DNA of 64,000 nucleotides from Octopus bimaculoides (Eukaryota), in assembly GCF_001194135.2 (NCBI RefSeq), contig NC_068981.1, forward strand, positions 128,673,422 to 128,737,421, in the 5' to 3' direction. Of the stretch, positions 2,336 to 63,146 are shown piece after piece. The position numbers and the translations under genes were made by a program. A model generated the notes under the pieces. That model worked only from the letters and a program-made list of their open reading frames with translations. It was not told the DNA's origin and did no database searches. The number at the start of each line of letters is the position of its first letter. Position 1 is the first letter of the stretch.

Positions 2336-2464
2336 TCAATCGAAGAAGACGTAAATGAGGATGAGAAATTGGATAACTTACAGCTTACCCTTGAAGTGCC
2401 ACTGTATGATTCAGAAAATGTTGTTGCCATTGAAATGTTACTGTTTTTCCATTATGAATTGCAT
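2336..2464 (+). CDS. TMEM231: TMEM231 internal exon (129 bp, phase 0/0)
   Basis: tgcag|TCAATC...TTGCAT|gtaagt; SIEEDVNEDEKLDNLQLTLEVPLYDSENVVAIEMLLFFHYELH. Confidence 0.93.
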
Positions 2465-5400
2465 GTAAGTTCATTGTTAAACATTTCATATCATTGAAAT
2501 TAGAAACAGTTTTAACTCTATTGATTCACACTCAACGGCCTCCATCAATTGATAACCTGTAACAGAAACAATAGGATAATGTATGTAAAATCTGTTTGTT
2601 ATATGGACTACTCTTTGGAATTCAGCATGAGTGTATGACAAGTGAACAGTTTGTGTATCACACTTTTTAACATGTTAGAGACAGGGTTATAAGAAGATTT
2701 TGTGAGGTTGGTAAGTCTTCTTGAAATGGCATGGTTTCTACGGTGGCAAGAAATTCTCTGTTTTATCTCATTTAGCTGTAAGAAAGTAGGATAGTGTTAA
2801 CCCATTAGCATTTAAACTAGCCATATCCAACTCTAATATTCAAACTGGCCAGATTTGGCTTTTCACACATACCCTACAATGTCATTTTAAAAATAAACAG
2901 TCACCTCATCAAAATCTCAAAGCTATGAGATAATACATGATTAATTCAAAACAATGTCAATAAATAAGCATTACATTTGAAAGAGTAATCTGAATCCTGA
3001 AGGGTTAAATGTATTTAGTTTTTTAGTAAGACTTGAAAACAATATTCAAGGCACTCGTGAAAGGTAATATTTATTATGAAGTATTTTTCTCTGTATTTCA
3101 TTTTAGAAGAATTTTAGTACCTTACAATCTGTCTACAAATATATCATTTGCTTCAAACTCCCAATACACTAGCTATCAACAATCAGTTCAGTAGCTATCA
3201 GTGATTTATGTGCTTCCACCAACTAACCCAAGTATAGATTACCACTCTATTAGCTATCAACACTCAGCATGAATGTCAAGACACTAGCTTTCTGTAACAA
3301 ACCCACTAAATACAAATCGCCAGCCTTTTACCTATGAACAGACTTTTTATTTTAAAATATTGACTGTGTTGCACACACTCAATTCAGTAGCGTACCAGTC
3401 TATCAACTAAAGTATTGATGGTTCATATCTTCACACTGGCAAAGACATGCAACCCTCCATGTGCTTATTTGTCAGTTGTAATGCCATGAAAACACTTTAA
3501 TTCTCAAGTATTTTGTTGCCTTGCTGTCCTAAGTTCAAAATCATACTATGGACTTAATAAATAGCAATAGCAAGTTACTGTAGTAATCAATTTAGTAATG
3601 TTCCTAATGGGTTATATAACATGACATTTAAATTCCTTATTGTCTTTCTTTTTGCAGAAGCATGGTTCATTGTATATGAATTCTATGGCTTATATTCATC
3701 ATTCATCTGTAATACCAGGTGCCAAAATAGATGTGTATGGTACATTGGAAACTGTGCAGAGAATACCTCTTCACTATAAAGGCAATGATATACGATTTAA
3801 CGTAAGTTTAATGATGTAATTGTTCTCTTTTCTACTACAGATAAATCACCCACTTCTTTTAACATTTGTTTTATTTTGTTTACTACTGTACTGATGGCAT
3901 GTAAAATGCACCCAGCACACTCTGTAGAATAGTTGGTGTTAGGAAGGGCATCCAACCATAGAAACCTTGCTACAACAGATAATTGGAATCTGGACAACTC
4001 CCCAACTGGCCAGCTCCTGTCAAACCATCCAACCCATTCCAACATGGAAAATAGATGCTAAATGATGCTGATGGTGATTGTAACTGCTATTTTCCCATTA
4101 TGGAAAGCTGAAATGATATCCTCTTTTGGGGAGAGAAGTTACTGTTTCATTTGTTAAACATTGCTGAATCTGTATCTAAGAGAATGTTTGTTATATGGAC
4201 CACTATTTGTAACCCAGCTTGAGTGTATAACAAGTGAACATTTGTGTATGACACCTTTTAACATGTTAGAGATAAGGTTATTGGAAGATTTGGGTGATTG
4301 GTAAGTCTGCTTGCAATGGCATGGTTATTTACTGACTACTTATGGGGATTGTTTCCAAGCACAGCAAGAAGAAAGCCATGCTCAACAAAATAGAGCAATA
4401 GCAATGTTCATGCATTTTCCCAATGCTTGCAACATTTTTCCTTTTGTGAACAACCACTGGAAAAAACAGAATATTTATACTTCAGAAATTGTGATACTCA
4501 GTATTAGAAAAAATGAGAAAAAGTGATGGTCTCAGATGAAATACCTCTATCATATGTCTTCTCAGTAAGAGTCAATCTGATGCTTAACAAAAATAGCAAC
4601 AACTGTTAATGCAACTAAAACTCCATGACCTTTAAAAACATTATTACGCAGTTAAGTTTGGTAATTTATACCAATACTCATTGTTAGAGCTTTAATATTG
4701 GTTTCATATTTGTGACAGCATTAATTTGGACTGTTGTTTCTAGCAAAAGGTCCTGTCTCATCTACACTCACGCATTAAATCCACTTCAGAATCAAAACAA
4801 CAAACATTGTGCTGTAATTTTTAACAAGTCAACACTGCCCTATTTATCATATATCTCAGGAGAATTTTCTTCAGTGAGGAATTTCCAAACATTCTGTGTC
4901 ACTAATACCTTTTGGCTAGAAATTCACCTCCTGTAGACTGAATGTCCTTTCTTACAAAAAAGAAAACAAACACAATAAGCATGAGTTTGTTTTTTTGCTG
5001 GAATTTTTTTTTCTGCTTTCATAACAGAGTAAATTTCTCTGTGAATTTATCAGACTTTAAGCTTTTCCTTGGACAGCCTTTTGTTTCATTATTTTTGTCT
5101 TTTCCTTCTAAAAGCCATTTTGCTTCTTATTAATCATGTTGGCAGAGAGACAGACAAATGAGAGGAGTGACATTTATTTTACATTCCTGTGTCTTTCTGT
5201 AATTTCATTTCCATTTTAAGATATTTAATGAAATTTTTTTAAATGTTAATTCATATACATAACGCATAATATATTTATTGTACTTATATATACATATATA
5301 ATACATATACTTGGAAATGGATGCGTGGCATTCGATCATATAATAATATAAATAATATATAAATATATGCATATATCCATACATATATGTACATACCTAC

Positions 5401-6973: not shown

Positions 6974-9900
6974 GTGTGTGTATAGGGAAGAAAATGTTGT
7001 AACTGTAACAATTTCTTCCACCTCTCTTGTGTCAAACTCACTCGATGCACCTTGGAATCGCTGCATTGGTGGCACTGCCCAAGCTGCCTAACCTCCAGAG
7101 GAGAATGTAATTCTCAATACTATGAGCGAACACAGAGGTGTGGCGTAGTTGTGACTTGACCCCACTCAGTCATGATGAAGTCTTGGTGTCAATCTCCGGC
7201 CTTACACAGTGGCAGAGAATCATCTTCAGAATCCCCAAAGCTGCCCATACTTTTGTGGCTGAAGTACTAGTGTCATCTATAGACCAGGCACTTGCTACCA
7301 ACAGCTTGCAAGACTGGAACATCCAACACACTCATGGCTGCTGACAACAGGGTTGCTTTTTCCACAGGTATCCAGCAGGGTGACCTTCATAGTCCACTCC
7401 TTTTTGTGTTGGTTGTCAGTGATGTTGCCCAACCAGTCCACTGACCCTTCAGTGTCTGGTACCTGGATGACATGACCCTGGCTGGCTCAGCTGAGCCTGT
7501 AGTTGGAGACTTTCAGCAGGTCATCCCAGCCCCAAAGCTTCTTAGGTTTGAGATCAAATCTGCCCAAGTCAGAGGTGATAAACATGAACTGTGATGAGGT
7601 TGATTTCTAGGACACCATATTCAGCATCCAACCCATCTTGGCAGGGGCTCAGCTGACTCCAAGAGATGCCATCTGCATTCTTGGCTTCTCAATCCTCCTG
7701 AAAGCCATAACAGAGTGCCTGGAGACTAAGCTTGCAGACTTGTCTAGGATGACTGAGAGATTGCACCTCATTGACACACATCATGCTCTTCCTTTTGAGG
7801 AATTGTTTTGCTCTGCCTAAGCCCCTTTTCTCACTATGTAAGATGCCATGTCATCCTCTCACAGATTGCCTCAGGGAAGTCAATGCCACCATCTGTTATT
7901 GTGCTGAACTGATCTGCAATGTCAGTTTTGACAGCACCAGCTGGCAACAGGCTAATCTACCTATTAAATTCAGTGGCCTTGGCCTCCATTCCACTATTGA
8001 CCTGGCTCTGGTAGCTGATCTTTTCCTCAATCTCCTCCTGCCACACCCTCATCAACAAAGCACCCCACAGGATGACTGAACCCAATGTGACCCAGGAACT
8101 GGAACAGTCAGCTCTGGCCAATTGGACCATTGAAGGTCTTGCCATCCCCCAGAATACAGATGTCTAATGTAACAGCAATGACATCAAATCAAAATCTACC
8201 TTCAGGCAGAATGAGACATCCTTAGACCAGCGCTGCCTTGCCCACCTCCATTCTGCTTCACAGTCAAACAGTGGTGCATAGCTCAATACAATGCCTTCTT
8301 CATCAACTATCTTGATCGTGAGTGCACTCATATCAAGGTGGCTCAGGACCTTGGTCTGTGTGTGTGTGCGAGCCACACAAATGCCATTATGGAACTGTAG
8401 TCAATGAATTCAACCTGCATCAATTATTTCGCAGCCATAGTGCAGGCAGGTTCTCTTGACATGCCACCCTGAATGGTATAATTAGAAGGGGCCTCCACAC
8501 AGCCTGCTGCATGTCACAACTGAAGCCAGTTGGTCTTGACTGCAAAGATAGTAGGCATCTTGATGCTATAAGCTTCTTATATGAAGGAGACACTGCAAAA
8601 TGCTGCAACACGTTCTCCAGCTCCAACCATGTAGAGGAGAGAAAGATAAGCAAATACATGAGCCTAATCAGCCGTTGTCTGTTTGTGCTAGTCACCATCT
8701 AGACCTCAGGTGCTCTTGGATCCTGCACTGTTGATTTTCTCCACAAAATCAGGATGACTACAGCCCCTCTGAGAAATGATCCCTGCAAGATGGGGTAGTT
8801 GTTGCAGTGAGTATTGCTAGTTACTCTCTATGGCAATGCCTTTGCAGCTATGTTCACAAGGCATGGCTGCACACCACACCATTTAGTCTGGGGTGTACAG
8901 TACAACTTGTTACTCCCTCCTCCTCCTCCTGTAAAAATATGTTAATAAATAAACAAAAGATTAAACAAAAAAATTATGATGATTATTTTTCACCTTTACA
9001 TTGGTTGGATGGCTTTGCAGAACCCAGTATTTCTACAGTAGAAAGACTTTGGTTTTATACCCTTTCTTAATATTAATTATTTAATGAGAAAGCAGTTTCT
9101 AAAACCAATTGGAGCTTGTGGAAGAGGAAGACCAAGAAAGGCATAGGAAGAAATGATGAAAGCTGATCTCAGGAGAGGATGAAGATGAGATCCAATACAG
9201 AATCTCACCAACTAGTGTGATGTGCTGTACAGACAAAGACCTGCACAACCCATGCAAATATGGTAAAATGGATGTAAAGTGATAATGTGCTGTATCCAAG
9301 AATACAAGGCAATAACTGTAGCAATATTTGAAAGCACAAACTACAGTTAAGTCTGAAAACAATTGTCTTTAAATTTATGATTAAGAAAGTAATTATTTAA
9401 GTATGTGGAGATTCTTATCTTATTAATTACTATCAAGAATTTCATTTAATTGTTGTAATTACCTAAGGACACAATTTAGGTAGAACAGTTTGCCAAATTG
9501 GCACAATAAATTGCTCTTAGCAGAAGTTGATATTTTGACTTTCAAGGGTTTGTAATCAATTCTTTTAATTTTGTTTGGAATTATGTTCATGTGAATTTGC
9601 TTTCCAATGTCAGTCAGTTATAAATCATCATCTGCAGACTGATGATTGGTAATGTCAATCGCAGTTGTGAGGGTGATGGTTGTGGTGGTAGCAATGGAGG
9701 GAAGAGGAGGAAGAGGAATATTACATCGGCAATGATATAGACATGATAGTGAGTAATGAGTATTATTGTGCTGCTGGTATATGAGGACAATGACAATTAC
9801 ATTGTTGGTTCTAATGATGTTAACAATAACAAAAGGGGGTGATCATTTCTAGTATAGGAATGATCATTTCTAGTATATGTTCAAGACTTCAGATTTAGTG

Positions 9901-12900
9901 GGAGGAATATGGTCAATTTAATTGATCTCAGTACTTCACTGGCTCCAATTTTTGGCTCTGGGACTTAATGCAATAGTACATGACATTTTATCCAACATTT
10001 TACTATTGGAATTATACTTATAATCATAAAGATGATTAGACATGCAAAATTGCTGTAAAACAAACTCTATGTTATATAGTTCATCTTGACACAATATTTC
10101 ATGAGATATATTAACTAACATTCTTTCAATGTCTATAATTCAATCTGTTCTCCCATTCATTTCCAGACATCCGTAATTGATTCTGACAGTGCATTTGCCT
10201 CAGCTTATGATTTGTCTAATATTCTGAAGAAGTATCATGAAAGAAATGGTATGTTCATTCTTTTGTAAAAATTTGCTGGAGGAACAATATCTTGCTTCAT
10301 TTAACACCTGTCGAGTGTCCTAGTCTAATCACCTATTTGTCCAAGTTTTTTTCCCCTATTTGCTCTACTTTAGTCACTCGCTTTTCTTTATTTATTTCCC
10401 CTATTTGTTTTAGATTATTTTCCTTATTCTAATTTTGGCCACCTACTCATCCATATTTAATTTCCTGAGTAGTACTACTTTAACTTCCTTAGTTACTATT
10501 CTTTACTCCACTTACTAGTTTACTCCACCAATTTCATCTATTTTGATTTATCTATTTGTCCTAATTTAGCCAAACTATTTGTTTTGATATAATACTACAT
10601 TTCTCAGTGTAACCAACCTACTTGGCATGTTCTAGTTTAGTCTCAGTTTAGTTCATTTATTTGCCTAATTTTAGTTTAAACCACCTACATAGTTGGTCTT
10701 AGTTGAGACTGCTTACATTACCATTCTCACTTTAGACCACCAAGATGATGTGTCATTTTCCTTACCTTCTTAAACATTTCCAGGTTTTATATTTTTGCAA
10801 AAAATTCCTATACTATTAACTCCATATCCCTAGAACTAGTAATTATCTTAGTTCAGATGCAATCATAAACACAAGAGATATGTTAAACAACTTTTGGATT
10901 ACCTCTAGAAGATAAATTGCTCCTACAACCATCAATTAACCACTAGGAAGATGAAATTTATTAGAGCTGGACTTTTGTTGTGTTGGTAGTTTGGTAGTCT
11001 GAACTGGGATGCATTATGTCAGTGGACAGGTATCAAGACATGACAATAACCTTGATTTATTTGTCAAATATCTCACTGGCAATTTTTTAAACAGCTCATA
11101 TTTATTGCTTTTTTTTTACATGTGCAGTAAAGGAAGTGGTATTGACTTCATCATCATCATGTGTGATGTTATCATCATGATGAACATTCAGCACATTATT
11201 AATATCATCATTCCTATTCTCACACATATATTGTTTGAAAAACATTGTAATCATCATTATTATCAGTTTAACATCTATCTACAAGTATGCAAGGGTGAGA
11301 AATATATGAGCTGTGGTTAAATATGTGTTCTAGTATAAATTTTATAAAAGTTTTTCTCTGAAAATTTTTTAAACCAAATTTTATCGCCTGTCAAATAATT
11401 AAAAACTTGACAATCTCTTTCGTAATATATGGTGTTTATATATGTTTTATCATCCATCTTGTTTCAAACTTGAACTTCTATACTGAATAGTAAAGAGTTC
11501 AAGAAAGTTATATGTAAAAGCCATATTACACTATTGCCAGCAACTGTAGATTACACAAAAGTAACTAATTGACATGAGGATTTTCAGTTAAAATAATTAC
11601 ATCTAGTAGCAGCCTTCACATAATGCTGAGAGCAGAAAGAATTAACTCATTGACAACAAGATTTATACAGCTGTTAGTGGTAGAGAAATATCCTATTGTG
11701 GAAAGAGTTCACAGTTGTTTGGTATGTCAGAACGTTTGTTCTTCACATAATGCTGACAGCAGAAAAAATTAACTCATTGACAACACGATTTATACTGCTG
11801 TTAGTGGTAGAATAATATCTAATTGCAGAAAGAGTTCGCAGTTGTCTAGTATGTCAGAATATGTGTTTGAGATATGGTTAGGTTTGGATTTGAACTAGTA
11901 CATACATTTCAGAATGATTGATGATTTTGTGTTTAAGACAACAGTCTCAGGTTGAAAGGAATACAAGAGCAAAGAGGAGCCATGTGCTATAAAGATAAAG
12001 TTCCCAAGTGCAATGACTTCAGGCACAGTTAGATGCTCATCCTATCACCAATTTTTATAACATCAACAGGATTTAAAGAGCATCATTTCTCAAAACCATC
12101 ACACCCATGCTAACATGAGAAAATAAATACAAAATGAAATCAGTTTTGTTATATTTTACCTTATCATAACAGTGCACTAAATTTTCTGTTTCTTTCCAGT
12201 GACCACCAAATTGATAGAACCGTACTATGTTTGGACCATTGGACGTGGGGCCAAAATGCCATTTATTATTTCAGTGACCATTAACTACCCACAGCAAGAA
12301 TTTATGTATCCTTTTAATCATTCATTTGTTTGTTTTTCATTCATTTTTCTATGCTAGCGGAAGTGTGCATCTGTACATTTACATTCGACAATTCATATAA
12401 AAAAAGCACTGAGCTGTAGATGGTAATATTGATATTTGTCAATAATCATTTGCAAATTCCTTACTTTTGAAGGCAAGTGGAATGAAAACACCTTTACTTG
12501 TAAGATAGGTTAGTAACAGGAAGGGAATCTGGCTGTAAAACAATACCTCAGTAATATGTATTTGTTTAAACCATGCTAGCATGGAAAAATAAGACAAATG
12601 AATATATTTGAGGTGCATTCTAGAATTTTTGAAACTTTTTCAGGAGATACATTTACTAATTTCAAAGAGGTACAAAACTCTGACTTCAATGCACTTGTTG
12701 TAGTGCACCAGCCACTTCATGAAAGCCCCATGGAAGTCCTCCAAAGTGAAAGTGTCCAGGACTCTTACATTATCCTGGTGCAGGTGCCATCAACCCAAGT
12801 GGAAGAGCTCTGGCCTTTTGCAACAAAATCTTTTCTGAACTCCCTCAAAACCTCCACAAAGTATTCTTTGTTGACCATCTGATCAGGGAGAACCCAATAG

Positions 12901-14039
12901 ATATAGATGATACCCTTGCTGCTAAAAACAGGGATCATCATCAGCTTCCTAATGGACTTGCTTTGCCTGACCTTCTTGGGTCTAGGACTGACAAGATGCT
13001 TTCATTGGGCACTCTGTCTCTTGGTTTCTGGATCATAACAGTAGGCTCATCTTTTGTTACAGGTCACCAGAGATTCAAATACTCTTGGACTGGAAGTAAT
13101 GAGCTCAACCATCTCCATGCTGTCACAGCACCTCTTCCTTTCTGTTCATCACTGAGCACTCTGGGAGCAAACTTTGCATAAATTTTTTGCATGTTCAGAT
13201 CTTCATGAATAATTCTGTGTACAGTTGCCACACTAAATCTAAACTATGCTGTTTGTCTTTATAGACATACTATGTTCTTCATCCAAATCATTGCAAATTT
13301 TCTCAGGATATCCTGATGTCCCTCTCCTCCCACACTTCTCATCGTCTCTCACCTCCTCTCTATCATCCTTGAACCTCTCTTTCTGGCAAAAAACATGCTC
13401 AGCTCATACAAGTTAATCTATGAACAGTCTGTAGCATTTCACAAGTTTCTGTAGCATATTTGTTTTGTTTAACACAACACTTTATTGCATAGCAAGCTTC
13501 TAAATTGTCTTCACATCTCAACTGCATTCTGCAAACTAGCCAGCTGTGGCAAGCAATGTTTAGTAGAGTATGTTCAAAGTGCTGTAACAGCTGTCTCTTT
13601 CAATCTGGATAAAAAAAAGTTGGCAGGTCAGGTAATAATATGTATAGTAATGACATGCTAAAATTACAATCAATAATCTAGGACAGTTATAACTGCCTCT
13701 CCTAAATAAAAAGTCTCAAAACTTCTGGAATGCACCTTAATTTGAATGAAATGACTACAATTTTACATCCAGTTTTCCATGATTAGGATGCCTTTTTGTT
13801 GAATTTCATCATCCTCATCATCATTTAACGTCTGTTTTCCATGCTGGCATAGGTTGGATGGTTTAACTAAAAACTGGTAAGCTGGGCATTATGTACATTA
13901 TTTACATTTGACGGATATTTGTCCTCATATTGTTTGTTGTTAACACGTTTCAGTTGATATACCCTCCAGCCTTCATCAGGCGTCTCAGAGAAATTTTGAA
14001 CCTAGGTTCTCATTCCTAAGGTATTTTTCGATGTTGTTG

Positions 14040-14075
<36 letters not shown>

Positions 14076-14540
14076 TCACTGCCTGGAATTCAACNNNNNN
14101 NNNNNNNNNNNNNNNNNNNNNNNNNNNNNNNNNNNNNNNNNNNNNNNNNNNNNNNNNNNNNNNNNNNNNNNNNNNNNNNNNNNNNNNNNNNNNNNNNNNN
14201 NNNNNNNNNNNNNNNNNNNNNNNNNNNNNNNNNNNNNNNNNNNNNNNNNNNNNNNNNNNNNNNNNNNNNNNNNNNNNNNNNNNNNNNNNNNNNNNNNNNN
14301 NNNNNNNNNNNNNNNNNNNNNNNNNNNNNNNNNNNNNNNNNNNNNNNNNNNNNNNNNNNNNNNNNNNNNNNNNNNNNNNNNNNNNNNNNNNNNNNNNNNN
14401 NNNNNNNNNNNNNNNNNNNNNNNNNNNNNNNNNNNNNNNNNNNNNNNNNNNNNNNNNNNNNNNNNNNNNNNNNNNNNNNNNNNNNNNNNAGAAATTTTGA
14501 ACCTAGGTTCTCATTCCTAAGGTATTTTTCGATGTTGTTG

Positions 14541-14576
<36 letters not shown>

Positions 14577-14634
14577 TCACTGCCTGGAATTCAACTCGGA
14601 ATCTTGGGGTTAAGAGTTCAATACCAGGCAGTGA

Positions 14635-14676
<42 letters not shown>

Positions 14677-17600
14677 CAACATCGAAAAATACCTTAGGAA
14701 CGAGAACCCAGGTTCGAAATTTCCCCAAGACACCTGATGAAGGCTGGATGGTATATCAGCCAAAACGTGTTAACAAACAAGATGAGGACAAATATCCATC
14801 AAATGTAAATAATGTACATAATTCCTCATCTCTTAAATATAGAACTGGTAAGCTGGGGAGCTGCACCAGGATCCAATCTGATTTGGCAAGGTTTCTACAT
14901 CTGGACGCTCTTCCTAGCACCAACCACTCTGAGAGTGTAGTGGGTGCTTTTTACGTGCCACCAACATGGATGCCATTGACCTGACACTGAGATCAGCCAC
15001 AACTACAGTCTCACTTGGCTTGAGAGGTCCACACAGCACAGTATATCACCAAAGGTCTCGGTCACCTATCACTGCCTCTGTGAGGCCCAATGCTCGAATG
15101 GTGCTTTTTATATGTCACTGGAACAGGTACCAATTAGACAGCACTGGCATCAGCCACAACTACGATTTTACTTGGCTTGACAGGTTTTCACAAGCACAAC
15201 ATATTGCCCAACATTTGAAGGGTGCTTTTAACAAGCCAGTTACATGACACTGGAATCAGCCATAACTACAATCTCACTTTGTTTGACGGGTCTTCTCAAG
15301 CACGGCATATTGCCAATGGTCTCAGTCACTCGTCATTGCCTCCATAAGGCCCAACATTCGGGGATCACGCTTCACCACCTCATCTTGTCTTCCTGAGTCT
15401 ACCTCTTTCACAGGTTTCCTCCACCGTTAGAGTGCAATACTTCTTCACGCAGCTATCCTCGTCCGTACACATCACATGTCCATACCAGCACCGTCATCTC
15501 TCTCTTGCACACCACATCTGATTCCTCTTATGCCCAACTTTTCTCTCAGGACGCTTACACTCTGTTGTGCATGCACACTAACATTACACATCCAGTGAAG
15601 CACAGAACCTTCGTTTCTTACAAGCCTACACATATCCTCAGCAGTCACAACCCATGTTTCACTGCCATGTAGCATGGCTGTTTGAACACAGGCATCATAC
15701 AGTCTGTCTTTCACTCAGAGCAAGAGGCAGAGATAGCTCTCTGAACTTTGCCCAACCTATTCGTATTCTAGCAGTTAGACTCTCAGAGCATCCACCCCCA
15801 CTACTGATCTGGTCACCTAGGTAATGAAAGCTATCAACTACTTCTAGTTTTTCTCCCTGGCATGTGATGGAATTTATTTTCTGTACGTTCTTAGTGTTAA
15901 TTGTACCTGTGCACCTTCCACACACAAAAACTATTTTCCTTGTTAACCTTCCTCTGTTATTGCTGCACCTCTTATGTGTCCATAGCTTACACCGGGTACA
16001 TTTTATGGAGTTTCTACCTATGCTTTTTCTACAGATCAAGCAAGGCCATCTACCTAAAGTGATTTGTGATTTGTCTGCCTTCCTACTTACTAAGACTTTG
16101 ATTTTTGCTAGGTTAACTGTAAAGCCCTTCGATTCTAGATCTTGCTTCCACACTTGAAACTTCTTCTCTAGTTCTGGTAGTGATTCAGGTATAAGAGTAA
16201 GGTCATCAGCATAGAGGAGCTCCCAAGTGCAACCTGTCTTGAATTTCTCTGTTATNNNNNNNNNNGGGGGGGGGGTGTATTTCCTGTGAGAAACTTTTTT
16301 GCCACAAGATTGTCTGGCTGCAAAGGAAAGTAAATTTAAGTGAATACTGATTGCAACCTCTGAAGAAATACACCATGCCAGTTTTTACACATGTTTTTCC
16401 TGTAGTATCAGCTTTCTCCAGGTTTATTCTTATCTTTTTCTCCAAAGATCAACTAATTTTCCTCTTGGTATTAGATCTTAGGTTTCTTAAAAACCACTCC
16501 AGCAAGCACATCATCATTATCATTATCATTGTTTTAATGTTCAATTTTCCATGCTTGCATGGACTGGACAGGATCTGTTGAGATGGATTTTCCTTGGCTG
16601 GATGCCTTTCTTATTGCCAATCCCTACCCTTTTCCAAGTGAGGTGATATTTTCCCAAAACCAGATGTTTTCATGGAAGACTGGAAACAGAAGACACCACG
16701 TGCATAGCAGCAAAACTCATTTACAACTACAGTGGCGACTCATAGATAAAATTGGTGGGGGTGCTACATCAGAAAATTTTTAGCTGTTGTTTTAATATTA
16801 TGTAAAAGGAAACAAACATATAAAAAGAAAATTTATGCATAAACTTGATCGGTTCATGTTTTAGCCACTGACGGGTAGGGTGTTTAATTTTTTCACTGAA
16901 CACTGCCACAAATTCCCTCTTGTTTTTCAAAAATCCTCCCTAAATCACAAAATAAGGGGAGGAAATGTGCCTATTGTTCAAATCCTGGCAGCAACACTGA
17001 AGCTGGAAGCAGGATAATAATCTAATCCTACACTTTATCACTTTCAAGCATATAAACACGTTTTTAACCACAACACACACGGAATTAAAAAGAAACACTA
17101 CCTTTCACCCAGCACTGTCGTTCATGCAGTGCTGTCTCTCCCTTGTGTAAAGCTTCCTATCCTGGACATGTGAGCATGCATACAACAGCCAAACACTGTG
17201 TCGCTGGAACTGCGAAGCACACAGTTCTATACAAGGATTTTTGTATTTTTTCGTAAACTAGGGGATGGCTACTGACATTAAACTTAAGGATTATATAATG
17301 TACAAGTATAAAGAAAGAATTAAAGAAAAAAAGGACTCATTATGTTGAATGTTATCAATAGTATCGACTAGAAATAGGGGGTGCTGCAGTTCAGAAGTTC
17401 CTATACACAAGTCACCACTGTACGACTGCCAAATGATGTCAAGACTAGGAGACAGCAATGCACACACACAGACACACATACACATGAACAGTATGAATGA
17501 AGACAGTTGCATCAAGAAGTGCCAATCTCTAATTGTGGAGGAAATGTGGAAGGGACAGACCCAGAAAGACGTGAAACAAAGTGGTGAGAATGGACCTTCA

Positions 17601-20600
17601 GACATTGGACCACACAGAGGGGCTGACAAGGGACTGAGACTTGGCAGTTTGCTGTGCTTGATATCATGGTTGACCTTGCATACAGATATGTCCACTGCAT
17701 CCCTCTCCAGCTGAGCATTCCTAATCTTGTTGGTTCATGGGTGCTGGTGCCACATAAAAAACACTTTTACCAGTGTCACATAAATGCACTCATGCTGCAT
17801 TTGGCATTAGAAAAGGAATCCAGCTGTAGAAACCATGCCAAAACAGTCATGGAGCCTGGGAAACTCTTCAACTGGCCAGCTCCTGTCAAACCATCTAACC
17901 CATTTCAGCATGGAAAACAGATGTTAAATGATGATGAACAGACAGCTTCTTTCAGTTTCTGTCTATCAAATCCACTCACAAGGCTTTGGTCAACCTGGGT
18001 CTATAGCAGAAGACACTTGCCCAGACTCCCATGCAGTGGGGACTGAACCTGAAGCCACGTCATCGGGAAGCAAACTTCTTACCACACAACCACACCACTC
18101 TATACATAATTTTTATTATAACCAAATCACACATTACTAAGATACAAGCAATTAGTGTGGTTTATTAAAAATTAAAAACATGACTTTCTACAGCATACAA
18201 AATATAAAATACTTAAATTAAAATACTTAAATTAAGGAAAATGAGATTAGGGCTTCATTAACTCAATGAATATATTATGAAATAATTGGTGTTCTTGTTG
18301 ATTTAGTTCTATCTAATAGGTATCCTTTCACTGACCTACCAACTTTAGTAGAAGATAGTAAACTCTGCAATTTGTCAGTTGGTCAGTTTATTGGCTAATT
18401 ATGGATTTGGTTATAAATGTCAACAAACTTCATATGACTGAAAAGAAAATCTAACCTTTTCTGCAATTTCTCTCTCCACTAAAATATTTCTACAGCTGAC
18501 TTGAAGTATGTTAGTCATCAAATCCAGAGTTATTGAGTGGTTGCTGGTCAATACATTCTGGTATTTTACTTTGAAAATAGACATTTGTAGATATTTGATA
18601 CCTTAATGATTGGAAGGGATCTAAGCACTGTGCTTAATGTTATTTTCATGTCCGAGGAAGAAGGCCATTGTTGTAGCTCATAAACAGCCTTTTTGAATTT
18701 GGAACCTGGAGAGAATGATTGAAATTGATAAGACTAAGGATAAAGTTTGAATTTGGAGTCTGTGAATTGAGTGAGTAGTACAGAGAGCTGGGAATGGTTT
18801 ATGAAAGCCAAAAGTATATGTGGTTCTTTCTTAAAATAGTGTATTATGAATTGAAAACTATGAACTGCTCAGATATAGAACTTAATGAAAAGTAGAAAAA
18901 TAAACTCTGTTATATAGGTGATAATAATTTATATTGACTGTGACTCCAGTGATAGCATGGATCCTTGGAATGTAATCTTTGATGTGGGTTTTCAGCACAT
19001 GAGGAGCCAGGCAAATTCAGTGGGGGACTTCATGAAGAGTCGATATTGTATGCAACAAGTAAATAAAGGGATAAGTTAATTACATCAACCCCAAAAGGAT
19101 GAAAGGCAAAGTCAATCATGGCAGAATTTGAACTCAGAACATAAAGATGAACAAAATGCCACTAAGCATTTTACCTTGTGTGCTAATGTTTCTGCCTTGG
19201 CTCTAATTATTATTAGAGTATTTAAAACTTCTGGGTCAGCAGAGGTACTGAGTTCTATAATTTCTTCAATCTTTATTTAATTTCATTTTACTCTTTCTGT
19301 ATTTTTTATTATATTTAGTTATTTCCTTTTACGCAAATAGTTTCTTATTTTTCTTTTATTAAGTGGTATTTTTTAAAAGACTATTTAAGTTATGGACATT
19401 ACTTTTTAAATTGTCCAACCTTCTTTCAGTTCTTCATCTTTAACATTCTCGTGTGTGTGTGCACACACATGCACTTTGGTATTATAATTGATAGCTGAGT
19501 GGAATAGCTATGTATCTTTCTATCATGTGTAGCAAGAATATTTTTTTATGCTGGGAATAGTTTACAAAAGCTAAGAGTATGTGTGGTCCTTACTTGAAAT
19601 ATGAATTATGAATTAAAAACTATGAACTGCTCAGATAGAGAACTTAATGAAAGTAGAATATAAACTCTGTTATATAGGTGATAATTTATGTCGAATGTGG
19701 ATCTGGTGATAGCATGATGATTATCCAAAATGGCAACCAAAATACAACACTATGGAAGACTAGGTTTATAAACTTATGAGATAGAGTTTCATATTCCCCC
19801 TAAGTAACTATAGAATGTCTTAACCCTTTAGCATTCAAACCAGCCTTATCTGGCCCAAATATTCTACTTTATGTTCAAACTGTTCACATTTGGCTTCTCA
19901 CACATACCTTACAATGTTATTCTAAAACTAAACAATCACATCATCATAATCTTGAAGCTTCAAGATAAAGCATGATTAATTCAAAATAATGTAAATGAAT
20001 AAGTATTGCATTTGACAATAATCTGAATGCTAATGGATTAAACATTTACATAGAATGATATCAAGATGAGCAACTAGAAATTTGGGTATATACAGGGTGT
20101 CCCAAAAGTCACTGATGGGTTTCAATTTTTAATACCTTCCTTAAATTTACAAATAAATGCATGAAATTTTGATACAATATAAAGGACATAATGGAAATTA
20201 ATATGCACAAGTCAAATTTTGTAACACTACTACATCACATGTGAAAAATGACATCGCATAAATGTCAGCCATTTTCAGCTTTGCATGCCCATACTCTTTA
20301 TAAAATTTTGCACCATAACACCCTCAAGAGTTTCAAACCCCACTTCTCTATTTTCTTTATTGATGTTCGCCTTCAGTTGCACCAGGGTCTTCAGTTTGTT
20401 GACATAAACCTTCTCTTCCAGGTATCCATGATTGAGACCTTTTTGCACCCAGCCAGTCAAAAGTAGACCTCACACATGGTTCCAGTAAGATGGAGCAACT
20501 GCTCATACCACAAGAGAAACAATGCAGTTGCTACAGCAGTGCTTTGGAGAAAGAATAATCTCCTGCTATGGCAATGTCAACTGGCCTTCACATTCCCCAG

Positions 20601-23600
20601 ACTTGACTAACCCAGATTTTTTTCCTGTGGGGATACCTGGAAGAGATGGTTTACGTCACCAAATCAGAGACCTTGGAGAATATCGATAGAGAAATCAGAG
20701 AAGTGGGGTCTGAAACTCTTGAAGGTGTTATGGTGCAAATTTTGGAAAGAGCACGAGCATGTGAAGCTGAAAATGGCTGCCATTTAAGCAATGTCGTTTT
20801 TCACATGTGATGTAGTGGTGTTGCAAAATTTGACTTGTGCATATTAATTTCCATTATATCCTTTATATTGTATCAAAATTTCATGCATTTATTTGTAAAT
20901 TTAAGGAAGGTATTAAAAATTGAAACCCATCAGTGACTTTTGGGACACCCTGTATTAAGCTAAAATATTTGTGGTGGTAACTCTTTAAGGACAGTTATGC
21001 AAAACAGTCTTTCACAAAGTTTCTGCCTACCTCAAAGGATTAGATAGCTGAAGAATGACATGGTGTTGTGGATAACACAAAGTTGTGTAGTGTTGTGGAT
21101 GATACAGCGTCACTATAAAATGCCGTATTTACCAGATGCTTGTCCAAACAGTTCTTTTCTATGGTAGTGAGACCTGACAAATGCATGTTGCTGGTCTACA
21201 GAAGTGGGAGGTCTTTGACTGCTTCTGTATTCATCATCTTCTCTGACCATGTATCTCACACTGCATTTTGAACCAACAACTTTATGCTCACTGCAATCTC
21301 TCACCTCCTAAGGGAACTCTTCCGACAAGGGGACTACAGTGGTTTGGTCACACATTGTGGTTTCTCCATATTGAAATCATCCAGAAGGCAATAGCACCAA
21401 ATCCTCCCTTGGGTTGGCATAAGTGGAGAGATGGTCAGCTGTAGACATGGCTCACAACAGTCAAAACAGATATGGAGCTCACTTCTGGTCCTCAAGTCTT
21501 TGACATTCATTGCTGGAACTGGAAATGGCTTCAACACACTGCAAAATTGGCTGCCGACAGACATGCACGGATTGTTTTGACCCATGGCACTGAATGCAAT
21601 AGGAGCCAGCTTAACCCCTCCCGGCTAAATGCCGTTACAAGACAAGAAGAGAAAATATGAGGTTGGGATAGGCCAAAGAAGGTTTAAAAGAGGATAGCTA
21701 GAGTAATGCTTTAAGAGATTAAATATCTAAGATAAATTATTATGACGACCTTCAAACATTAGGCCTCACTGAGGCAATGACTAGTGACCGAGACCTTTGG
21801 AAATATGCTGTGCGTGAGATGACCCGGCAAGCCAAATGAGACCATAACCCGTGGGCTTTGCCAGGGGTGTAGCCAGCCTACTTATGCGTACCTTTCCTTC
21901 ACTGGACACTAAACTCTGCTTGCGAAGACCTGTTGAGGCAAATGAAATTGAAATCAAACCAAATTCAACGACTGACACCCATGCCAACCTTTCCTTCATT
22001 GGACACTAAACTCTGCTTGTGAAGACCTGTTGGGGCAATCAAAATCAAAATTGAACCAAATTCGATGACTGGCACCTGTGCCAGTGGAGCACTAACAGCA
22101 CCATCCGAGCGTGATCATTGCCAGAGCAGCTGTCTGGCTTCCATGCCAGTGGCACATAAATAGCACCAATTGAGCGTGATCATTACCAGCGTCGCCTTAC
22201 TGGCACTTGTGCCAGTGGCACGTGAAAAAACATTCCAGCGAGGTCGTTGCCAGTGCCACTGGACTGGCTCCTGTGTAGGTGACACATAAAAAACACCATT
22301 TGAGCGTGGCCGTTGCTGGTACTGCCTGGCTGGCCCTTGTGCTGGTAGCATGTAAAAGCACTCACTACACTCTCGGAGTGGTTGGTGTTAGGAAGGGCAT
22401 CCAGCTGTAGAAACTCTGCCAGATCAGATTGGAGCCTGGTGCAGCCATCTGGTTCACCAATCCTCAGTCAAATCGTCCAACCCATGCTAGCATGGAAAGC
22501 AGACGTTAAACGATGATGATGATATTACTGATAGATGAGCAGTGTTTAGTTTTGATGCTATGATGTAGTACAGAATAAATCTAGATAGCCAATACTGTGT
22601 GCTTGAATTAAATTCAAGATTAATTTACAATGTTGGCAGAAATTTATTAGTTTATTCTGATGTACATCATAGCTTCAAATTATTGTTAATACAATAATCA
22701 TTTTTCAAACTATAAATCTCATTTCTAATGAGAAAACAATTATTGATATTTACATGAGATAAGGCATCAAGCTGGCAGAATTATTACACCAGATGAAATC
22801 GTTAGGGGTACTTTGTCTGTCTTTACAATCTGAGTTCAAATTCCACCAGGGTTGGATTTCCTTTCATCCTTTTGGGGTTGATAAAATATGTACTAGTTGA
22901 GTCCTGGATTCAGCATAATTGACTTACTCCTTCCCCCCAAACCGCTGGCCCTGCGCAAAAATTTGAAATTAATATTTAAAAGCACCCACTACACTCTCTG
23001 AGTGGTTGGCGTTAGGAAGGGCATCCAGCTGTAGAAACTCTGCCAAATCAGATTGGAGCCTGGTGTAGCCATCTGGTTTCACCAGTCCTCAGTCAAATCG
23101 TCCAACCCATGCTAGCATGGAAACCGGATGTTAAACGATGATGATGATGAAGGTGGTGAGCTGACAGAATCATTAGCACATTAGACAAAATGCTTAGTGG
23201 CATTACATCTGTCTTTAAGTTCTGAGTTCAAGCTTCATGGAGGTCGACTTTGCCTTTCATCCTTCCAGGGTTGATAAAAGAAGTACCAGTTGAACACTGG
23301 GTGGGGTGGGGTGTGATCAATTTACCCTCTCCCCTTGAAATTGCAGGCCTTGTACCAAAACTTGAAAGGAAAGATATATTACAAATATATCCAGTATACA
23401 TCAGCATGGAAAACCAAACATTACATTGATGATACTAAATCAATTTTATATTCAACTTGTAGCTTTTCTATAGACTAGCATTTCTTTTCTCTCCCTCCAA
23501 AGTTTACTTTTTTTCCTTGACTCTTCCTTGTTATACTCCAAGCTTACTGTACCAGCTAAAGTGGGGTTGGGTGCAGTATGTATCATTGCTGATTTTCTTC

Positions 23601-23702
23601 CTTGTAGTGGGTCATAACCTAAAGGTGTTCATCTTTAGCAACCAACTTGTGAATACAATCATAACAAGGCCTTACAGAGATACGGGGCTGAAACTTTCCT
23701 GA
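2336..23702 (+). CDS. TMEM231: TMEM231 (transmembrane protein 231, ciliary transition zone), 5'-partial, 5 exons joined: 2336-2464, 3658-3801, 10167-10248, 12200-12305, 23531-23702
   Basis: Spliced translation SIEEDVNEDEKLDNLQLTLEVPL...MNSMAYI...AYDLSNILKKYHERNVTT...NYPQQEFIYTPSLLYQLKWGWVQYVSLLIFF...FSNQLVNTI is colinear with the human TMEM231 C-terminal two-thirds as recalled. Exon sizes 129/144/82/106 keep the frame. Upstream exons were not found in the window. Confidence 0.93.
2797..3008. mobile_element. piggyBac-type MITE family A
   Basis: TTAA-CCCATTAGCATT ... AATCCTGAAGGG-TTAA; homologous copies at 19820, 25228, 62562. Confidence 0.7.
3658..3801 (+). CDS. TMEM231: TMEM231 internal exon (144 bp, phase 0/0)
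   Basis: tttgcag|AAGCAT...TTTAAC|gtaagt; KHGSLYMNSMAYIHHSSVIPGAKIDVYGTLETVQRIPLHYKGNDIRFN. Confidence 0.93.
3903..4075 (+). mobile_element. RTE-type 3' tail / SINE fragment
   Basis: gttaggaagggcatccaaccatagaaacc...acccattccaacatggaaaa...gatg tail shared with many copies in the window. Confidence 0.7.
5522..5893 (+). mobile_element. RTE LINE 3' UTR with ~64-bp hairpin-containing tandem units and (GAT)n tail
   Basis: Three units ending gtgccggtggcac, then the conserved tail; same order as 22150-22523, where it follows RTE ORF2. Confidence 0.8.
6029..6365 (+). mobile_element. RTE-clade LINE ORF2 fragment (post-RT region), cut by gap
   Basis: WAKFRELLPLL...KGRLYDACVRTAMLHGSETW...RRLRWFGHVVRM. 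Confidence 0.9.
6931..6972. repeat. (TA)n microsatellite at gap edge
   Basis: Direct reading. Confidence 0.95.
7010..8860 (+). mobile_element. Decayed CRE-like non-LTR retrotransposon (RT + Zn-knuckle + restriction-like endonuclease)
   Basis: GIQQGDLHSPLLF...WYLDDMTL (~7370-7480); LGLCVCEPHKC...SAGRFS(R)HATLNGIIRRGL; E-RKISKY; TSGALG; C-terminal SIA...GNA; many stops and frameshifts. Confidence 0.7.
10167..10248 (+). CDS. TMEM231: TMEM231 internal exon (82 bp)
   Basis: ttccag|ACATCC...AGAAATG|gtatgt; TSVIDSDSAFASAYDLSNILKKYHERN(V). Confidence 0.92.
11614..11867 (+). repeat. Tandem duplication, 2 x ~127 bp
   Basis: cttcacataatgctga... starts at 11614 and 11741 with high similarity throughout. 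Confidence 0.9.
12200..12305 (+). CDS. TMEM231: TMEM231 penultimate exon (106 bp), followed by U12-type donor
   Basis: tttccag|TGACC...GAATTTAT|gtatcctttt; (V)TTKLIEPYYVWTIGRGAKMPFIISVTINYPQQEF(I). Confidence 0.92.
12306..12315 (+). promoter_or_regulatory. U12-type (minor spliceosome) 5' splice site GTATCCTTTT
   Basis: Exact match to the RTATCCTT consensus at the exon end required by frame and homology. Confidence 0.9.
12608..13741 (-). mobile_element. Near full-length decayed mariner with TIRs
   Basis: TIRs gaggtgcattctagaatttttgaaactttt / aaaaagtctcaaaacttctggaatgcacctt; minus-strand YDPETKRQS, KLMMIPVF..KGII, VNKEYFVEVL. Confidence 0.85.
13811..16255 (-). mobile_element. 5'-truncated RTE LINE (RT C-half with YADD, 3' UTR, tail), interrupted by the Penelope-like insertion
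   Basis: Minus strand WELLYADDLTLI..ELEKKFQVWKQ, C-x-C-x-H Zn motif (KCTRCKLWTHKRC), FHYLGDQI, WAKFREL, MLHGSETW; conserved tail ending (gat)n at ~13811. Confidence 0.9.
13887..14842. mobile_element. Second palindromic Penelope-like insertion (tRNA-like part + (AAT)n + hammerhead-like tail), nested in an RTE tail
   Basis: Same sequence as the arms of 1090-2245; inversion loop 14598-14613; 15-bp TSD aactggtaagctggg at 13872-13886 and 14843-14857. Confidence 0.82.
17395..18095. mobile_element. RTE ORF2 end and tail (+) followed by a CORE-type SINE (-)
   Basis: MNEDSCIKKCQSL at ~17490-17530; tail 17790-17935; inverted SINE head 17940-18095. Confidence 0.7.
18786..19715 (+). repeat. Dispersed direct repeat, ~170 bp copies at 18786-18958 and 19548-19715
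   Basis: Shared core aaaactatgaactgctcagata-agaacttaatgaaa...taaactctgttatataggtgataat. Confidence 0.85.
19820..20041. mobile_element. piggyBac-type MITE family A
   Basis: TTAA-CCCTTTAGCATTC ... GAATGCTAATGGA-TTAA. Confidence 0.75.
20093..20952. mobile_element. Tc1/mariner DD41D (rosa-like) fold-back element with ~330-bp inverted arms
   Basis: TA-CAGGGTGTCCCAAAAGTCAC ... GTGACTTTTGGGACACCCTG-TA; internal WFQ*DGATAHT...WPSHSPDLTNPDFF(L)WGYL with 41 residues between the last two Asp. Confidence 0.88.
21110..21600 (+). mobile_element. Decayed RTE-like LINE ORF2 3' part (second family)
   Basis: KCRIYQMLVQTVLFYGSET*, RRGLQWFGH, TWLTTVKTDME..GPQVF, AADRHA. Confidence 0.65.
21750..22523 (+). mobile_element. 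RTE LINE C-terminus + repeat-containing 3' UTR + (GAT)n tail
   Basis: DLQTLGLTEAMTSDRDLWKYAVRE..RQAK-stop, duplicated ~105-bp segment, ~64-bp units, conserved tail. Confidence 0.82.
22760..23370 (+). mobile_element. Cluster of SINEs (tRNA-derived SINE, RTE tail, tRNA-derived SINE)
   Basis: ctgagttcaaattcc...ctttcatcctttggggttgataaaa core twice; RTE tail 22980-23148. Confidence 0.75.
23513..23521 (+). promoter_or_regulatory. U12-type branch site TTCCTTGAC
   Basis: Matches TTCCTTRAC. Branch A at 23520 lies 10 nt before the inferred acceptor. Confidence 0.85.
23531..23702 (+). CDS. TMEM231: TMEM231 last coding exon (start could alternatively be 23537 or 23543)
   Basis: YTPSLLYQLKWGWVQYVSLLIFFLVVGHNLKVFIFSNQLVNTIITRPYRDTGLKLS-stop matches the TMEM231 C-terminal TM segment. 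U12 branch site lies just upstream. Confidence 0.88.

Positions 23703-37369: not shown

Positions 37370-63146
<25,777 letters not shown>

What the first reader, a model, noticed from the sequence alone, without database searches (positions are those of the whole stretch)
12306..23542. 11.2-kb U12 (minor) intron in TMEM231 apparently ending in TG, with three in-frame candidate acceptors
Seen: perfect U12 donor GTATCCTTTT and branch TTCCTTGAC, with no AG within 20 nt after the branch A. Candidate ends are TG (23530), TAC (23536) and AAG (23542). They are spaced 6 nt apart and all in frame. Only TG gives PQQEFI-YTPSLLYQLKWGWVQY, which is gap-free against human [22 protein letters not shown] (recalled) and keeps the conserved Y-x-P. 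Known: U12 acceptors are chosen largely by distance from the branch site, and the first and last intron bases interact (G-G or A-C). That favours GT-TG over GT-AC. Inference: a rare GT-TG minor intron, or tandem acceptors giving isoforms that differ by 2-4 aa just before the last TM helix. Automated annotation would probably miss it.
Basis: partly seen in the sequence, partly recalled or inferred. Interest (0 to 1): 0.75.

Follow-up and report, generated by a model that had tools for sequence, protein, structure and literature searches.

The report
Octopus TMEM231 minor intron ending TG
The last intron of the octopus cilium gene TMEM231 is a genuine minor-spliceosome (U12-type) intron that ends in TG instead of AG in three octopus species and a cuttlefish; this intron end is rare but already catalogued, and NCBI's gene models already use it.

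Summary
A GTATCCTTTT donor sits at 12306 and a TTCCTTGAC branch site at 23513-23521. No AG ends within 21 nt after the branch A. Three in-frame candidate ends lie at 23530 (TG), 23536 (AC) and 23542 (AG).

The window is Octopus bimaculoides chromosome CM046601.1. Both assembly gaps lie inside the intron, in a block that O. sinensis lacks, and the flanks are collinear with the gap-free O. sinensis intron.

The TG end is the productive junction:
- RefSeq proteins of O. bimaculoides and O. sinensis both read EFI|Y(T/S)PSLL.
- 117 TMEM231 representatives show no indel at this point.
- TG lies 10 nt after the branch A in O. bimaculoides, O. sinensis, O. vulgaris and Sepia pharaonis.
- In Sepia the nearest AG and AC are out of frame.
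- The AC is lost in O. sinensis and O. vulgaris.

The same intron is GT-AG in two gastropods and a mussel, and AT-AC in amphioxus and a fish. It is absent in Dreissena.

GT-TG minor introns are known but rare (about 0.04% of conserved animal minor introns). This is a new, deeply conserved member of a known kind. I could not obtain RNA reads. Three non-RefSeq gene models mis-annotate this junction.

The parts
2336..2464 (+). TMEM231 coding exon (SIEEDVNEDEK...HYELH); the two first exons lie upstream of the window
   Evidence: Pfam TM231 positions 102-152. AG|...|GTAAGT borders. Identical to XP_014772534.1 residues 104-146.
3658..3801 (+). TMEM231 coding exon (KHGSLYMNS...DIRFN)
   Evidence: Pfam TM231 positions 141-199. 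CAG|...|GTAAGT borders. tblastn of P0001.
10167..10248 (+). TMEM231 coding exon (TSVIDSDSAFASAYDLSNILKKYHERN + 1 nt)
   Evidence: tblastn of P0001. CAG|...|GTATGT borders.
12200..12305 (+). TMEM231 penultimate coding exon; it ends with 2 nt (AT) of the Ile codon
   Evidence: Pfam TM231 from position 223.
12306..12315 (+). U12-type 5' splice site GTATCCTTTT (base -1 is T)
   Evidence: Identical in O. sinensis and O. vulgaris. The orthologues have GTATCCTT or ATATCCTT at the same codon position.
12306..23530 (+). U12-type GT-TG intron, phase 2; 11,225 nt as assembled, including 405 N
   Evidence: Collinear with the 6,138-nt gap-free O. sinensis intron.
14095..14489 (.). Assembly gap inside the intron (395 N); does not touch coding sequence
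   Evidence: It lies in the O. bimaculoides-specific block 13995-18044.
16256..16265 (.). Assembly gap inside the intron (10 N)
23513..23521 (+). U12-type branch-site sequence TTCCTTGAC, branch A at 23520
   Evidence: It is the only TTCCTTRAC in the window on either strand. Identical in O. sinensis and O. vulgaris; TTCCTTAAT in Sepia.
23529..23530 (+). Inferred 3' end of the intron, TG, 10 nt after the branch A
   Evidence: RefSeq models of two species. Family alignment. Conserved in four cephalopod genomes.
23535..23536 (+). Rejected candidate 3' end AC (+16)
   Evidence: In frame here, but changed to TC in O. sinensis and O. vulgaris, and out of frame in Sepia. It removes the conserved Tyr.
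23541..23542 (+). Candidate 3' end AG (+22), most likely ordinary coding sequence (CCA AGC)
   Evidence: In frame in Octopus, but it deletes 4 residues including Y-x-P. Sepia's AG is at +21 and shifts the frame.
23531..23702 (+). TMEM231 last coding exon (…YTPSLLYQLKWGWVQY…GLKLS, stop 23700-23702)
   Evidence: 61% identical at protein level to the Sepia exon.

Best explanation
Positions 12306-23530 are the last intron of Octopus bimaculoides TMEM231. It is an ancient U12-type (minor-spliceosome) intron whose 3' end is TG rather than AG.

Inferred mechanism, from established knowledge of minor splicing:
1. U11 and later U6atac pair with the donor GUAUCCUUU.
2. U12 pairs with UUCCUUGAC and bulges out A23520. 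The G before the A can still pair with U12 as a G-U wobble.
3. After branching, the 3' site is chosen mainly by its short distance from the branch.
4. The only usable dinucleotide in that range is UG at +10. Its terminal G can make the usual first-base/last-base G-G contact with G12306.

Ligation gives ...GAA TTT AT|T TAT ACT CCA..., which reads EFIYTP. This keeps the conserved Tyr-x-Pro and the family-standard spacing before the last transmembrane helix.

The TG end is a derived state shared by coleoid cephalopods. Other molluscs have GT-AG and chordates have AT-AC at the same position.

What is shown: the motifs, their positions, their conservation, the protein-level constraint, and the RefSeq models. 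What is inferred: the actual use of TG in RNA, and dependence on the minor spliceosome.
For: 1. The motifs sit exactly at the exon borders.
2. XP_014772534.1 (O. bimaculoides) and XP_029642118.1 (O. sinensis) both contain the TG-junction peptide: EFIYTPSLLYQ and EFIYSPSLLYQ.
3. In an alignment of 117 TMEM231 representatives, the spacing between YP..E and K..W.QY never varies and Tyr-x-Pro is conserved. The AC and AG ends would delete 2 and 4 residues that no homologue lacks.
4. Pfam TM231 scores are 79.9 bits (TG), 67.8 (AC) and 60.7 (AG).
5. TG at +10 is present in four cephalopod genome assemblies from four species: O. bimaculoides, O. sinensis, O. vulgaris and Sepia pharaonis. This rules out a base-call error.
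6. In Sepia, only TG (+10) and GG (+22) keep the frame. The AG (+21) and AC (+17) shift it. The Sepia annotation that used the AG has a frameshifted C-terminus without KWGWVQY.
7. The AC is lost in O. sinensis and O. vulgaris.
8. The orthologous intron, at the same codon position and phase, is U12-type in Lottia, Biomphalaria and Sinanodonta (GT-AG; branch A to end 12, 13 and 10 nt) and in Branchiostoma and Nerophis (AT-AC; 11 and 12 nt). A distance of 10 nt therefore occurs with a canonical AG in this same intron.
9. Human TMEM231 is a known minor-intron gene (PMC9992838, PMC8280824).
10. GT-TG minor introns are catalogued (PMC1557818 Table 2; PMC13602164 Table 1; PMC10639083 Table S1).
Against: - I examined no RNA read or cDNA. 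RefSeq models can be shaped by protein homology as well as by RNA-seq, and I could not see which supported this junction.
- Ten nt is just below the 11-13 nt optimum given in PMC3584512.
- TG ends are very rare (about 0.04%).
- In Octopus, an in-frame AG remains at +22.
- The last 7 nt of the intron (TTCCTTG, 23524-23530) repeat the branch-site core. In principle this offers a second U12 pairing register that would place the AG 11-12 nt downstream. However, that register has no A at the branch position, and the repeat is degenerate in Sepia.
Confidence: 0.85

Rival explanations
1. Tandem acceptors: TG is used, but the AG at 23542 (and in O. bimaculoides the AC at 23536) is also used at appreciable levels, giving isoforms 4 or 2 residues shorter just before the last transmembrane helix.
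For: All three ends are in frame in O. bimaculoides. The choice of U12-type 3' sites is reported to be error-prone (PMC3584512). Most non-canonical splice sites in human take part in alternative splicing (PMC4176328).
Against: The AC is absent in O. sinensis and O. vulgaris, and Sepia's AG and AC are out of frame, so no conserved tandem exists. The shorter forms would delete the conserved Tyr-x-Pro. RefSeq names no isoforms for the two Octopus proteins. The AG lies 22 nt from the branch, well beyond the 11-13 nt optimum.
Confidence: 0.1
2. The real acceptor is the canonical AG at 23542 (a GT-AG minor intron). The RefSeq junction is a homology-driven artefact.
For: AG is the normal partner of a G-start minor intron. 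The AG is kept in all three Octopus species. A second TTCCTTG copy ends 12 nt before it.
Against: The AG is part of codons CCA AGC, which encode the conserved Pro, so its conservation has another explanation. The result would be a 4-residue deletion seen in none of 117 homologues and a 19-bit loss of Pfam score. In Sepia the equivalent AG shifts the frame and destroys the last helix. At +22 it is far from the branch A.
Confidence: 0.04
3. The TG is an assembly or base-calling error, or the gaps hide a mis-join, and the true intron ends in AG.
For: The O. bimaculoides assembly has gaps within the intron.
Against: The same CTTG|TTAT junction is present in the O. sinensis, O. vulgaris and Sepia pharaonis assemblies, with no gaps in those introns. 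The flanks of the gaps are collinear with O. sinensis.
Confidence: 0.01
4. The intron is removed by the major (U2-type) spliceosome using another acceptor, such as the pyrimidine-rich AAG ending at 23502.
For: A good polypyrimidine tract followed by AAG lies at 23480-23502. Cryptic major-type sites are activated in human TMEM231 when minor splicing is impaired (PMC8280824).
Against: The donor TAT|GTATCC is a poor U1 site and a perfect U11/U6atac site. An acceptor at 23502 adds 28 nt, which is not a multiple of 3, so the downstream conserved frame is lost (read). The U12 motifs are conserved from molluscs to fish.
Confidence: 0.02

Closest known systems
Catalogued GT-TG U12-type introns: Sheth et al. 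2006, PMC1557818 (1 in mouse); Minor Intron Database, 1 human case (PMC13602164 Table 1); Larue and Roy 2023, PMC10639083 Table S1 (29 of about 73,700 conserved animal minor introns, 15 in plants)
   Same: A perfect U12 donor and branch site; the first and last bases are G...G; only the second-last base departs from AG.
   Different: I found no paper that describes this gene or lineage. Here the TG state is shared by octopods and a cuttlefish. It can be polarised as derived from GT-AG, which is the state in gastropods and a mussel.
The TMEM231 minor intron of vertebrates (a human minor-intron gene linked to Joubert and Meckel ciliopathies; PMC9992838, PMC8280824)
   Same: The same gene and, as shown here for a fish and for amphioxus, the same intron position and phase, directly before the conserved Tyr codon.
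   Different: The chordate copies examined are AT-AC and the molluscan ones are GT-AG or GT-TG. I did not retrieve the human locus itself.
TG alternative 3' splice sites of U2-type introns (Szafranski et al. 2007, PMC2374985)
   Same: TG serves as the 3' terminal dinucleotide; it is conserved across species; an AG lies within 28 nt downstream in Octopus.
   Different: The U2-type TG sites are never the sole acceptor and depend on a nearby AG. Here the intron is U12-type, TG appears to be the only productive end, and in Sepia the nearby AG is out of frame.
GT-GG and GT-AT minor introns (the commoner non-canonical G-start subtypes)
   Same: A one-base departure from GT-AG that the minor spliceosome tolerates.
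   Different: The changed base differs. A GT-AT reading (+14) is possible here but shifts the frame into a stop codon in all four cephalopods.

Membership tests
U12-type (minor-spliceosome) intron | 5' splice site matching /RTATCCTT | tested here: met
   GTATCCTTTT at 12306 with T at -1. Identical in O. sinensis and O. vulgaris; GTATCCTTAA in Sepia.
U12-type (minor-spliceosome) intron | Branch-site sequence TCCTTRAY close to the 3' end (optimum 11-13 nt; PMC3584512) | tested here: met
   TTCCTTGAC at 23513-23521, with the A 10 nt from the TG end. That is 1 nt below the optimum, but equal to the canonical GT-AG orthologue in Sinanodonta.
U12-type (minor-spliceosome) intron | The orthologous intron is U12-type in other lineages | tested here: met
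   Same position and phase, with U12 motifs, in Lottia, Biomphalaria, Sinanodonta, Branchiostoma and Nerophis. The intron is absent in Dreissena.
U12-type (minor-spliceosome) intron | Removal depends on U11, U12, U4atac and U6atac | not testable with these tools
   This needs snRNA knock-down or a blocking oligonucleotide in cephalopod cells or a heterologous minigene.
GT-TG subtype of minor introns | The intron starts with GT and its last two bases are TG at the junction actually used in mRNA | tested here: inconclusive
   The junction is inferred from two RefSeq models, the family alignment and cross-species frame analysis. I could not examine any RNA read.
TMEM231 (Pfam PF10149, TM231) | Significant match to the family profile, and orthology | tested here: met
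   79.9 bits, E = 2.5e-22, for the last two exons. The window encodes residues 104-313 of XP_014772534.1 without a mismatch.
Conserved tandem acceptors (NAGNAG-like alternative 3' sites) | Two or more in-frame acceptors kept across species | tested here: not met
   The AC is lost in O. sinensis and O. vulgaris. In Sepia the AG and AC are out of frame.

The most novel reading that the evidence does not exclude
TG may have become the sole, constitutive 3' end of this minor intron in the common ancestor of octopods and decapodiforms, and may have been kept for the whole history of coleoids. That history is roughly 250-300 million years, by my own knowledge of cephalopod divergence dates. If so, this would be a natural demonstration that the minor spliceosome can run indefinitely on distance plus a terminal G, without the second-last A. 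It might also reflect either a deliberately inefficient splice that throttles a ciliary transition-zone gene, or a lineage-wide relaxation of second-last-base specificity in cephalopods, which would show as an excess of GT-NG minor introns genome-wide.
Probability: 0.15. Interest if true: 0.5.

Novelty: new member of a known kind. Interest (0 to 1): 0.35.

Why it matters
It is a clean, phylogenetically polarised example of a very rare minor-intron end. The same ancient intron is AT-AC in chordates, GT-AG in gastropods and a mussel, GT-TG in coleoid cephalopods, and lost in Dreissena.

It also has a practical consequence. Annotation pipelines that insist on canonical ends either truncate or frameshift the C-terminal transmembrane helix of TMEM231. 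This happened in the original O. bimaculoides model, the O. vulgaris model and the Sepia pharaonis model, so comparative studies of ciliary transition-zone proteins that use those gene sets would be misled.

It does not change what is known about splicing. The subtype is catalogued, and RefSeq already carries the correct junction.

Tried and rejected
- A first word-indexed homology search with the 91-residue peptide of the last two exons found nothing. A longer 182-residue query found the O. bimaculoides RefSeq protein. The first result was therefore a limit of the index, not an absence.
I used P0001 instead.
I pasted stop-free open-frame pieces instead, which located two upstream exons.
- The alpaca isoform look-up found no record, so no mammalian locus was examined.
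- The experimental papers on U12 3' sites (PMC86782, PMC1370826, PMC2578861, PMC60238) are not held. Statements about them rest on reviews and later papers.
- Motif enrichment in the window is not significant by itself.
- Rfam found nothing in the window.
- A-to-I editing cannot create an AG here, because neither base of the TG is an A.
- A shift of both borders giving the same mRNA is not possible, by inspection of the sequences.
- A GT-AT reading at +14 shifts the frame into a stop codon.
Full report
**What is in the sequence.** The penultimate TMEM231 coding exon runs from 12200 to 12305 and ends ...CCA CAG CAA GAA TTT AT. The next bases are GTATCCTTTT (12306-12315), a perfect U12-type donor with T at -1. 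At the other end, TTCCTTGAC occupies 23513-23521, with the branch A at 23520. It is followed by CTCTTCCTTG|TTATACTCCAAGCTTACTG. No AG ends before 23542 (+22). TG ends at 23530 (+10), AC at 23536 (+16) and AG at 23542 (+22). All three keep the downstream frame ...KWGWVQY...GLKLS-stop.

**Chance.** Counting motifs alone is not impressive. RTATCCTTT occurs 4 times in the window against 2.0 expected, and TTCCTTRAC once against 1.4 expected. What chance does not give is their position at the exact borders of conserved coding sequence, and their conservation in orthologues.

**Origin of the window and the gaps.**
- A 182-residue query made from four exons retrieved XP_014772534.1, TMEM231 of Octopus bimaculoides.
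- Its locus is GCA_001194135.2, chromosome CM046601.1. It matches the window without a mismatch over the 25.7 kb they share. Window base 1 is CM046601.1:128,673,422.
- The window holds five of the seven coding exons: 2336-2464, 3658-3801, 10167-10248, 12200-12305 and 23531-23702.
- The two N runs flagged by the scan (14095-14489 and 16256-16265) lie inside the intron.
- They sit in a block of about 4 kb (13995-18044) that the gap-free O. sinensis intron (6,138 nt) lacks.
- The sequence before and after that block aligns in the same order and orientation with O. sinensis at 86-94% identity.
- The two exons are therefore truly neighbours. Frame is not an issue, and only the intron length (11,225 nt as assembled) is approximate.

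**Which 3' end is used.** I could not reach RNA reads, so the answer is comparative.

1. *Gene models.* The RefSeq proteins of O. bimaculoides (EFIYTPSLLYQ) and O. sinensis (EFIYSPSLLYQ) both correspond to the TG junction.
2. *Family alignment.* I aligned 117 near-full-length TMEM231 representatives from an exhaustive HMMER search (957 hits at E <= 0.001). The distance between the YP..E motif and K..W.QY never varies, and the Tyr-x-Pro just after the junction is conserved. The AC and AG ends would delete 2 or 4 residues, including the Tyr, or both the Tyr and the Pro.
3. *Profile score.* The Pfam TM231 score is 79.9 bits for TG, 67.8 for AC and 60.7 for AG.
4. *Other Octopus genomes.* O. sinensis and O. 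vulgaris have the identical TTCCTTGACTCTTCCTTG|TTAT. The AC candidate has become TC in both.
5. *Cuttlefish.* In Sepia pharaonis the intron is only 212 nt. It has donor GTATCCTTAA and branch site TTCCTTAAT, and again TG exactly 10 nt after the branch A, followed by T TAT AAC CCA (V-Y-N-P). There the nearest AG (+21) and AC (+17) shift the frame. Only TG (+10) or GG (+22) keeps KWGWVQY.
6. *A natural control.* The deposited Sepia model used that AG. It carries a frameshifted C-terminus, VISVPVKVGLGSICVCLGAVHHHF, in place of the conserved helix.

Taken together, TG is the only end that gives a conserved protein in all four cephalopods.

**The intron is ancient and of the minor type.** I mapped orthologous proteins onto their loci. 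Each locus has an intron at the same codon position (phase 2, directly before the Tyr codon), with U12 motifs.

| Species | Intron ends | Branch A to 3' end (nt) |
|---|---|---|
| O. bimaculoides, O. sinensis, O. vulgaris, Sepia pharaonis | GT-TG | 10 |
| Lottia gigantea | GT-AG | 12 |
| Biomphalaria glabrata | GT-AG | 13 |
| Sinanodonta woodiana | GT-AG | 10 |
| Branchiostoma floridae | AT-AC | 11 |
| Nerophis lumbriciformis | AT-AC | 12 |

Dreissena polymorpha has lost this intron and the one before it. The TG state is thus derived within cephalopods from a molluscan GT-AG. The 10-nt spacing is also used with a canonical AG in a mussel. Human and zebrafish TMEM231 are established minor-intron genes (PMC9992838; PMC8280824).

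**Mechanism (inferred).** The defining signals of minor introns are the donor and the branch site. The 3' end is recognised loosely and mainly by its short distance from the branch, with an optimum of 11-13 nt. GT-AC and AT-AG combinations are disfavoured (PMC3584512; PMC2374985). A 5' G is reported to splice to a 3' G or T (PMC4176328 discussion). Here no AG lies in range. The UG at +10 supplies the terminal G, and the AG at +22 is too far. I therefore propose ordinary minor-spliceosome splicing with UG as the exon-ligation site.

**Comparison with what is known.** GT-TG minor introns are catalogued:

| Source | GT-TG minor introns |
|---|---|
| SpliceRack (PMC1557818 Table 2) | 1 in mouse |
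| Minor Intron Database (PMC13602164 Table 1) | 1 human entry |
| Conserved animal minor introns (PMC10639083 Table S1) | 29 of about 73,700 (0.039%) |
| Conserved plant minor introns (same table) | 15 |

The PMC10639083 survey included Octopus sinensis. TG ends of major-type introns are different. They are never the sole acceptor and depend on a nearby AG (PMC2374985). I found no paper on this particular intron. The finding is thus a real, well-conserved new member of a known rare kind, already correctly modelled by RefSeq.

**What remains open.**
- Direct RNA evidence for the junction is missing.
- The level, if any, of use of the in-frame AG or AC in O. bimaculoides is unknown.
- It is unknown whether the TG end lowers splicing efficiency.
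- The last seven intron bases (TTCCTTG, 23524-23530) repeat the core of the branch site (23513-23519). I note this as unexplained. As a second U12 register it lacks a branch A, and the repeat is degenerate in Sepia.

Noticed in passing
window 12306 onward (read-through); P0004, P0003, P0192; L004 52335: Three deposited gene models get the TMEM231 C-terminus wrong because of this intron. UniProt A0A0L8HGA7 (O. bimaculoides, 273 aa) and CAI9715125.1 (O. vulgaris, 293 aa) read through the U12 donor (…EFMYPF…). The Sepia pharaonis model (279 aa) uses an out-of-frame AG and ends VISVPVKVGLGSICVCLGAVHHHF.
   Followed up: yes
L008 16547-16924 (Dreissena polymorpha): The zebra mussel's TMEM231 has lost this minor intron and the preceding intron. 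Residues 194-311 are encoded by one continuous exon.
   Followed up: partly
L007 6526-7296; L009 31061-33065; L006, L010, L011: The same intron shows subtype switching: AT-AC in amphioxus and a pipefish, GT-AG in two gastropods and a freshwater mussel. An ATG8-family gene sits next to TMEM231 in both amphioxus and the fish.
   Followed up: partly
window 23513-23519 and 23524-23530: The last seven bases of the intron (TTCCTTG) are a direct repeat of the branch-site core 11 nt upstream. This is identical in O. sinensis and O. vulgaris and degenerate in Sepia (TATCTTG). Its meaning is unknown.
   Followed up: partly
window 23480-23502: A strong major-type acceptor look-alike (ATTTCTTTTCTCTCCCTCCAAAG) lies 28 nt upstream of the TG junction and is out of frame. 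It is a plausible cryptic site if minor splicing fails, as reported for human TMEM231.
   Followed up: no
window 13995-18044: This block inside the intron is absent from O. sinensis and holds both assembly gaps. It also holds repeat-derived ORFs, for example 15695-16153 on the minus strand with weak PHD/C1 zinc-finger matches, and low-complexity poly-Leu ORFs.
   Followed up: partly
window 18320-18328 and 20856-20864 (+): Two further perfect U12-donor nonamers (GTATCCTTT and ATATCCTTT) lie inside the intron with no coding context. The first is not present in O. sinensis. They are probably chance, given 2 expected per window.
   Followed up: partly
window about 7000-8100 (+) and 29391-30095 (-): There are open frames that look derived from retroelements. 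One has a YLDD-like reverse-transcriptase motif (…PFSVWYLDDMTLAGS…) in the intron between the 3658-3801 and 10167-10248 exons. The 234-aa ORF at 29391-30095 had no Pfam match.
   Followed up: no
window 56494-56726 and 57703-57840 (+), possibly from about 50.6 kb: The next gene downstream on the same strand encodes a pyridine nucleotide-disulphide oxidoreductase (Pfam Pyr_redox and Pyr_redox_2). By eye it is dihydrolipoyl dehydrogenase-like. The GTATCCTT at 57286 lies deep in one of its introns with no exon border.
   Followed up: partly
The word-indexed protein search returned no candidates for a 91-residue query that is an exact substring of a database protein (P0001). Negative results from that tool with short queries are therefore unreliable.
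   Followed up: yes
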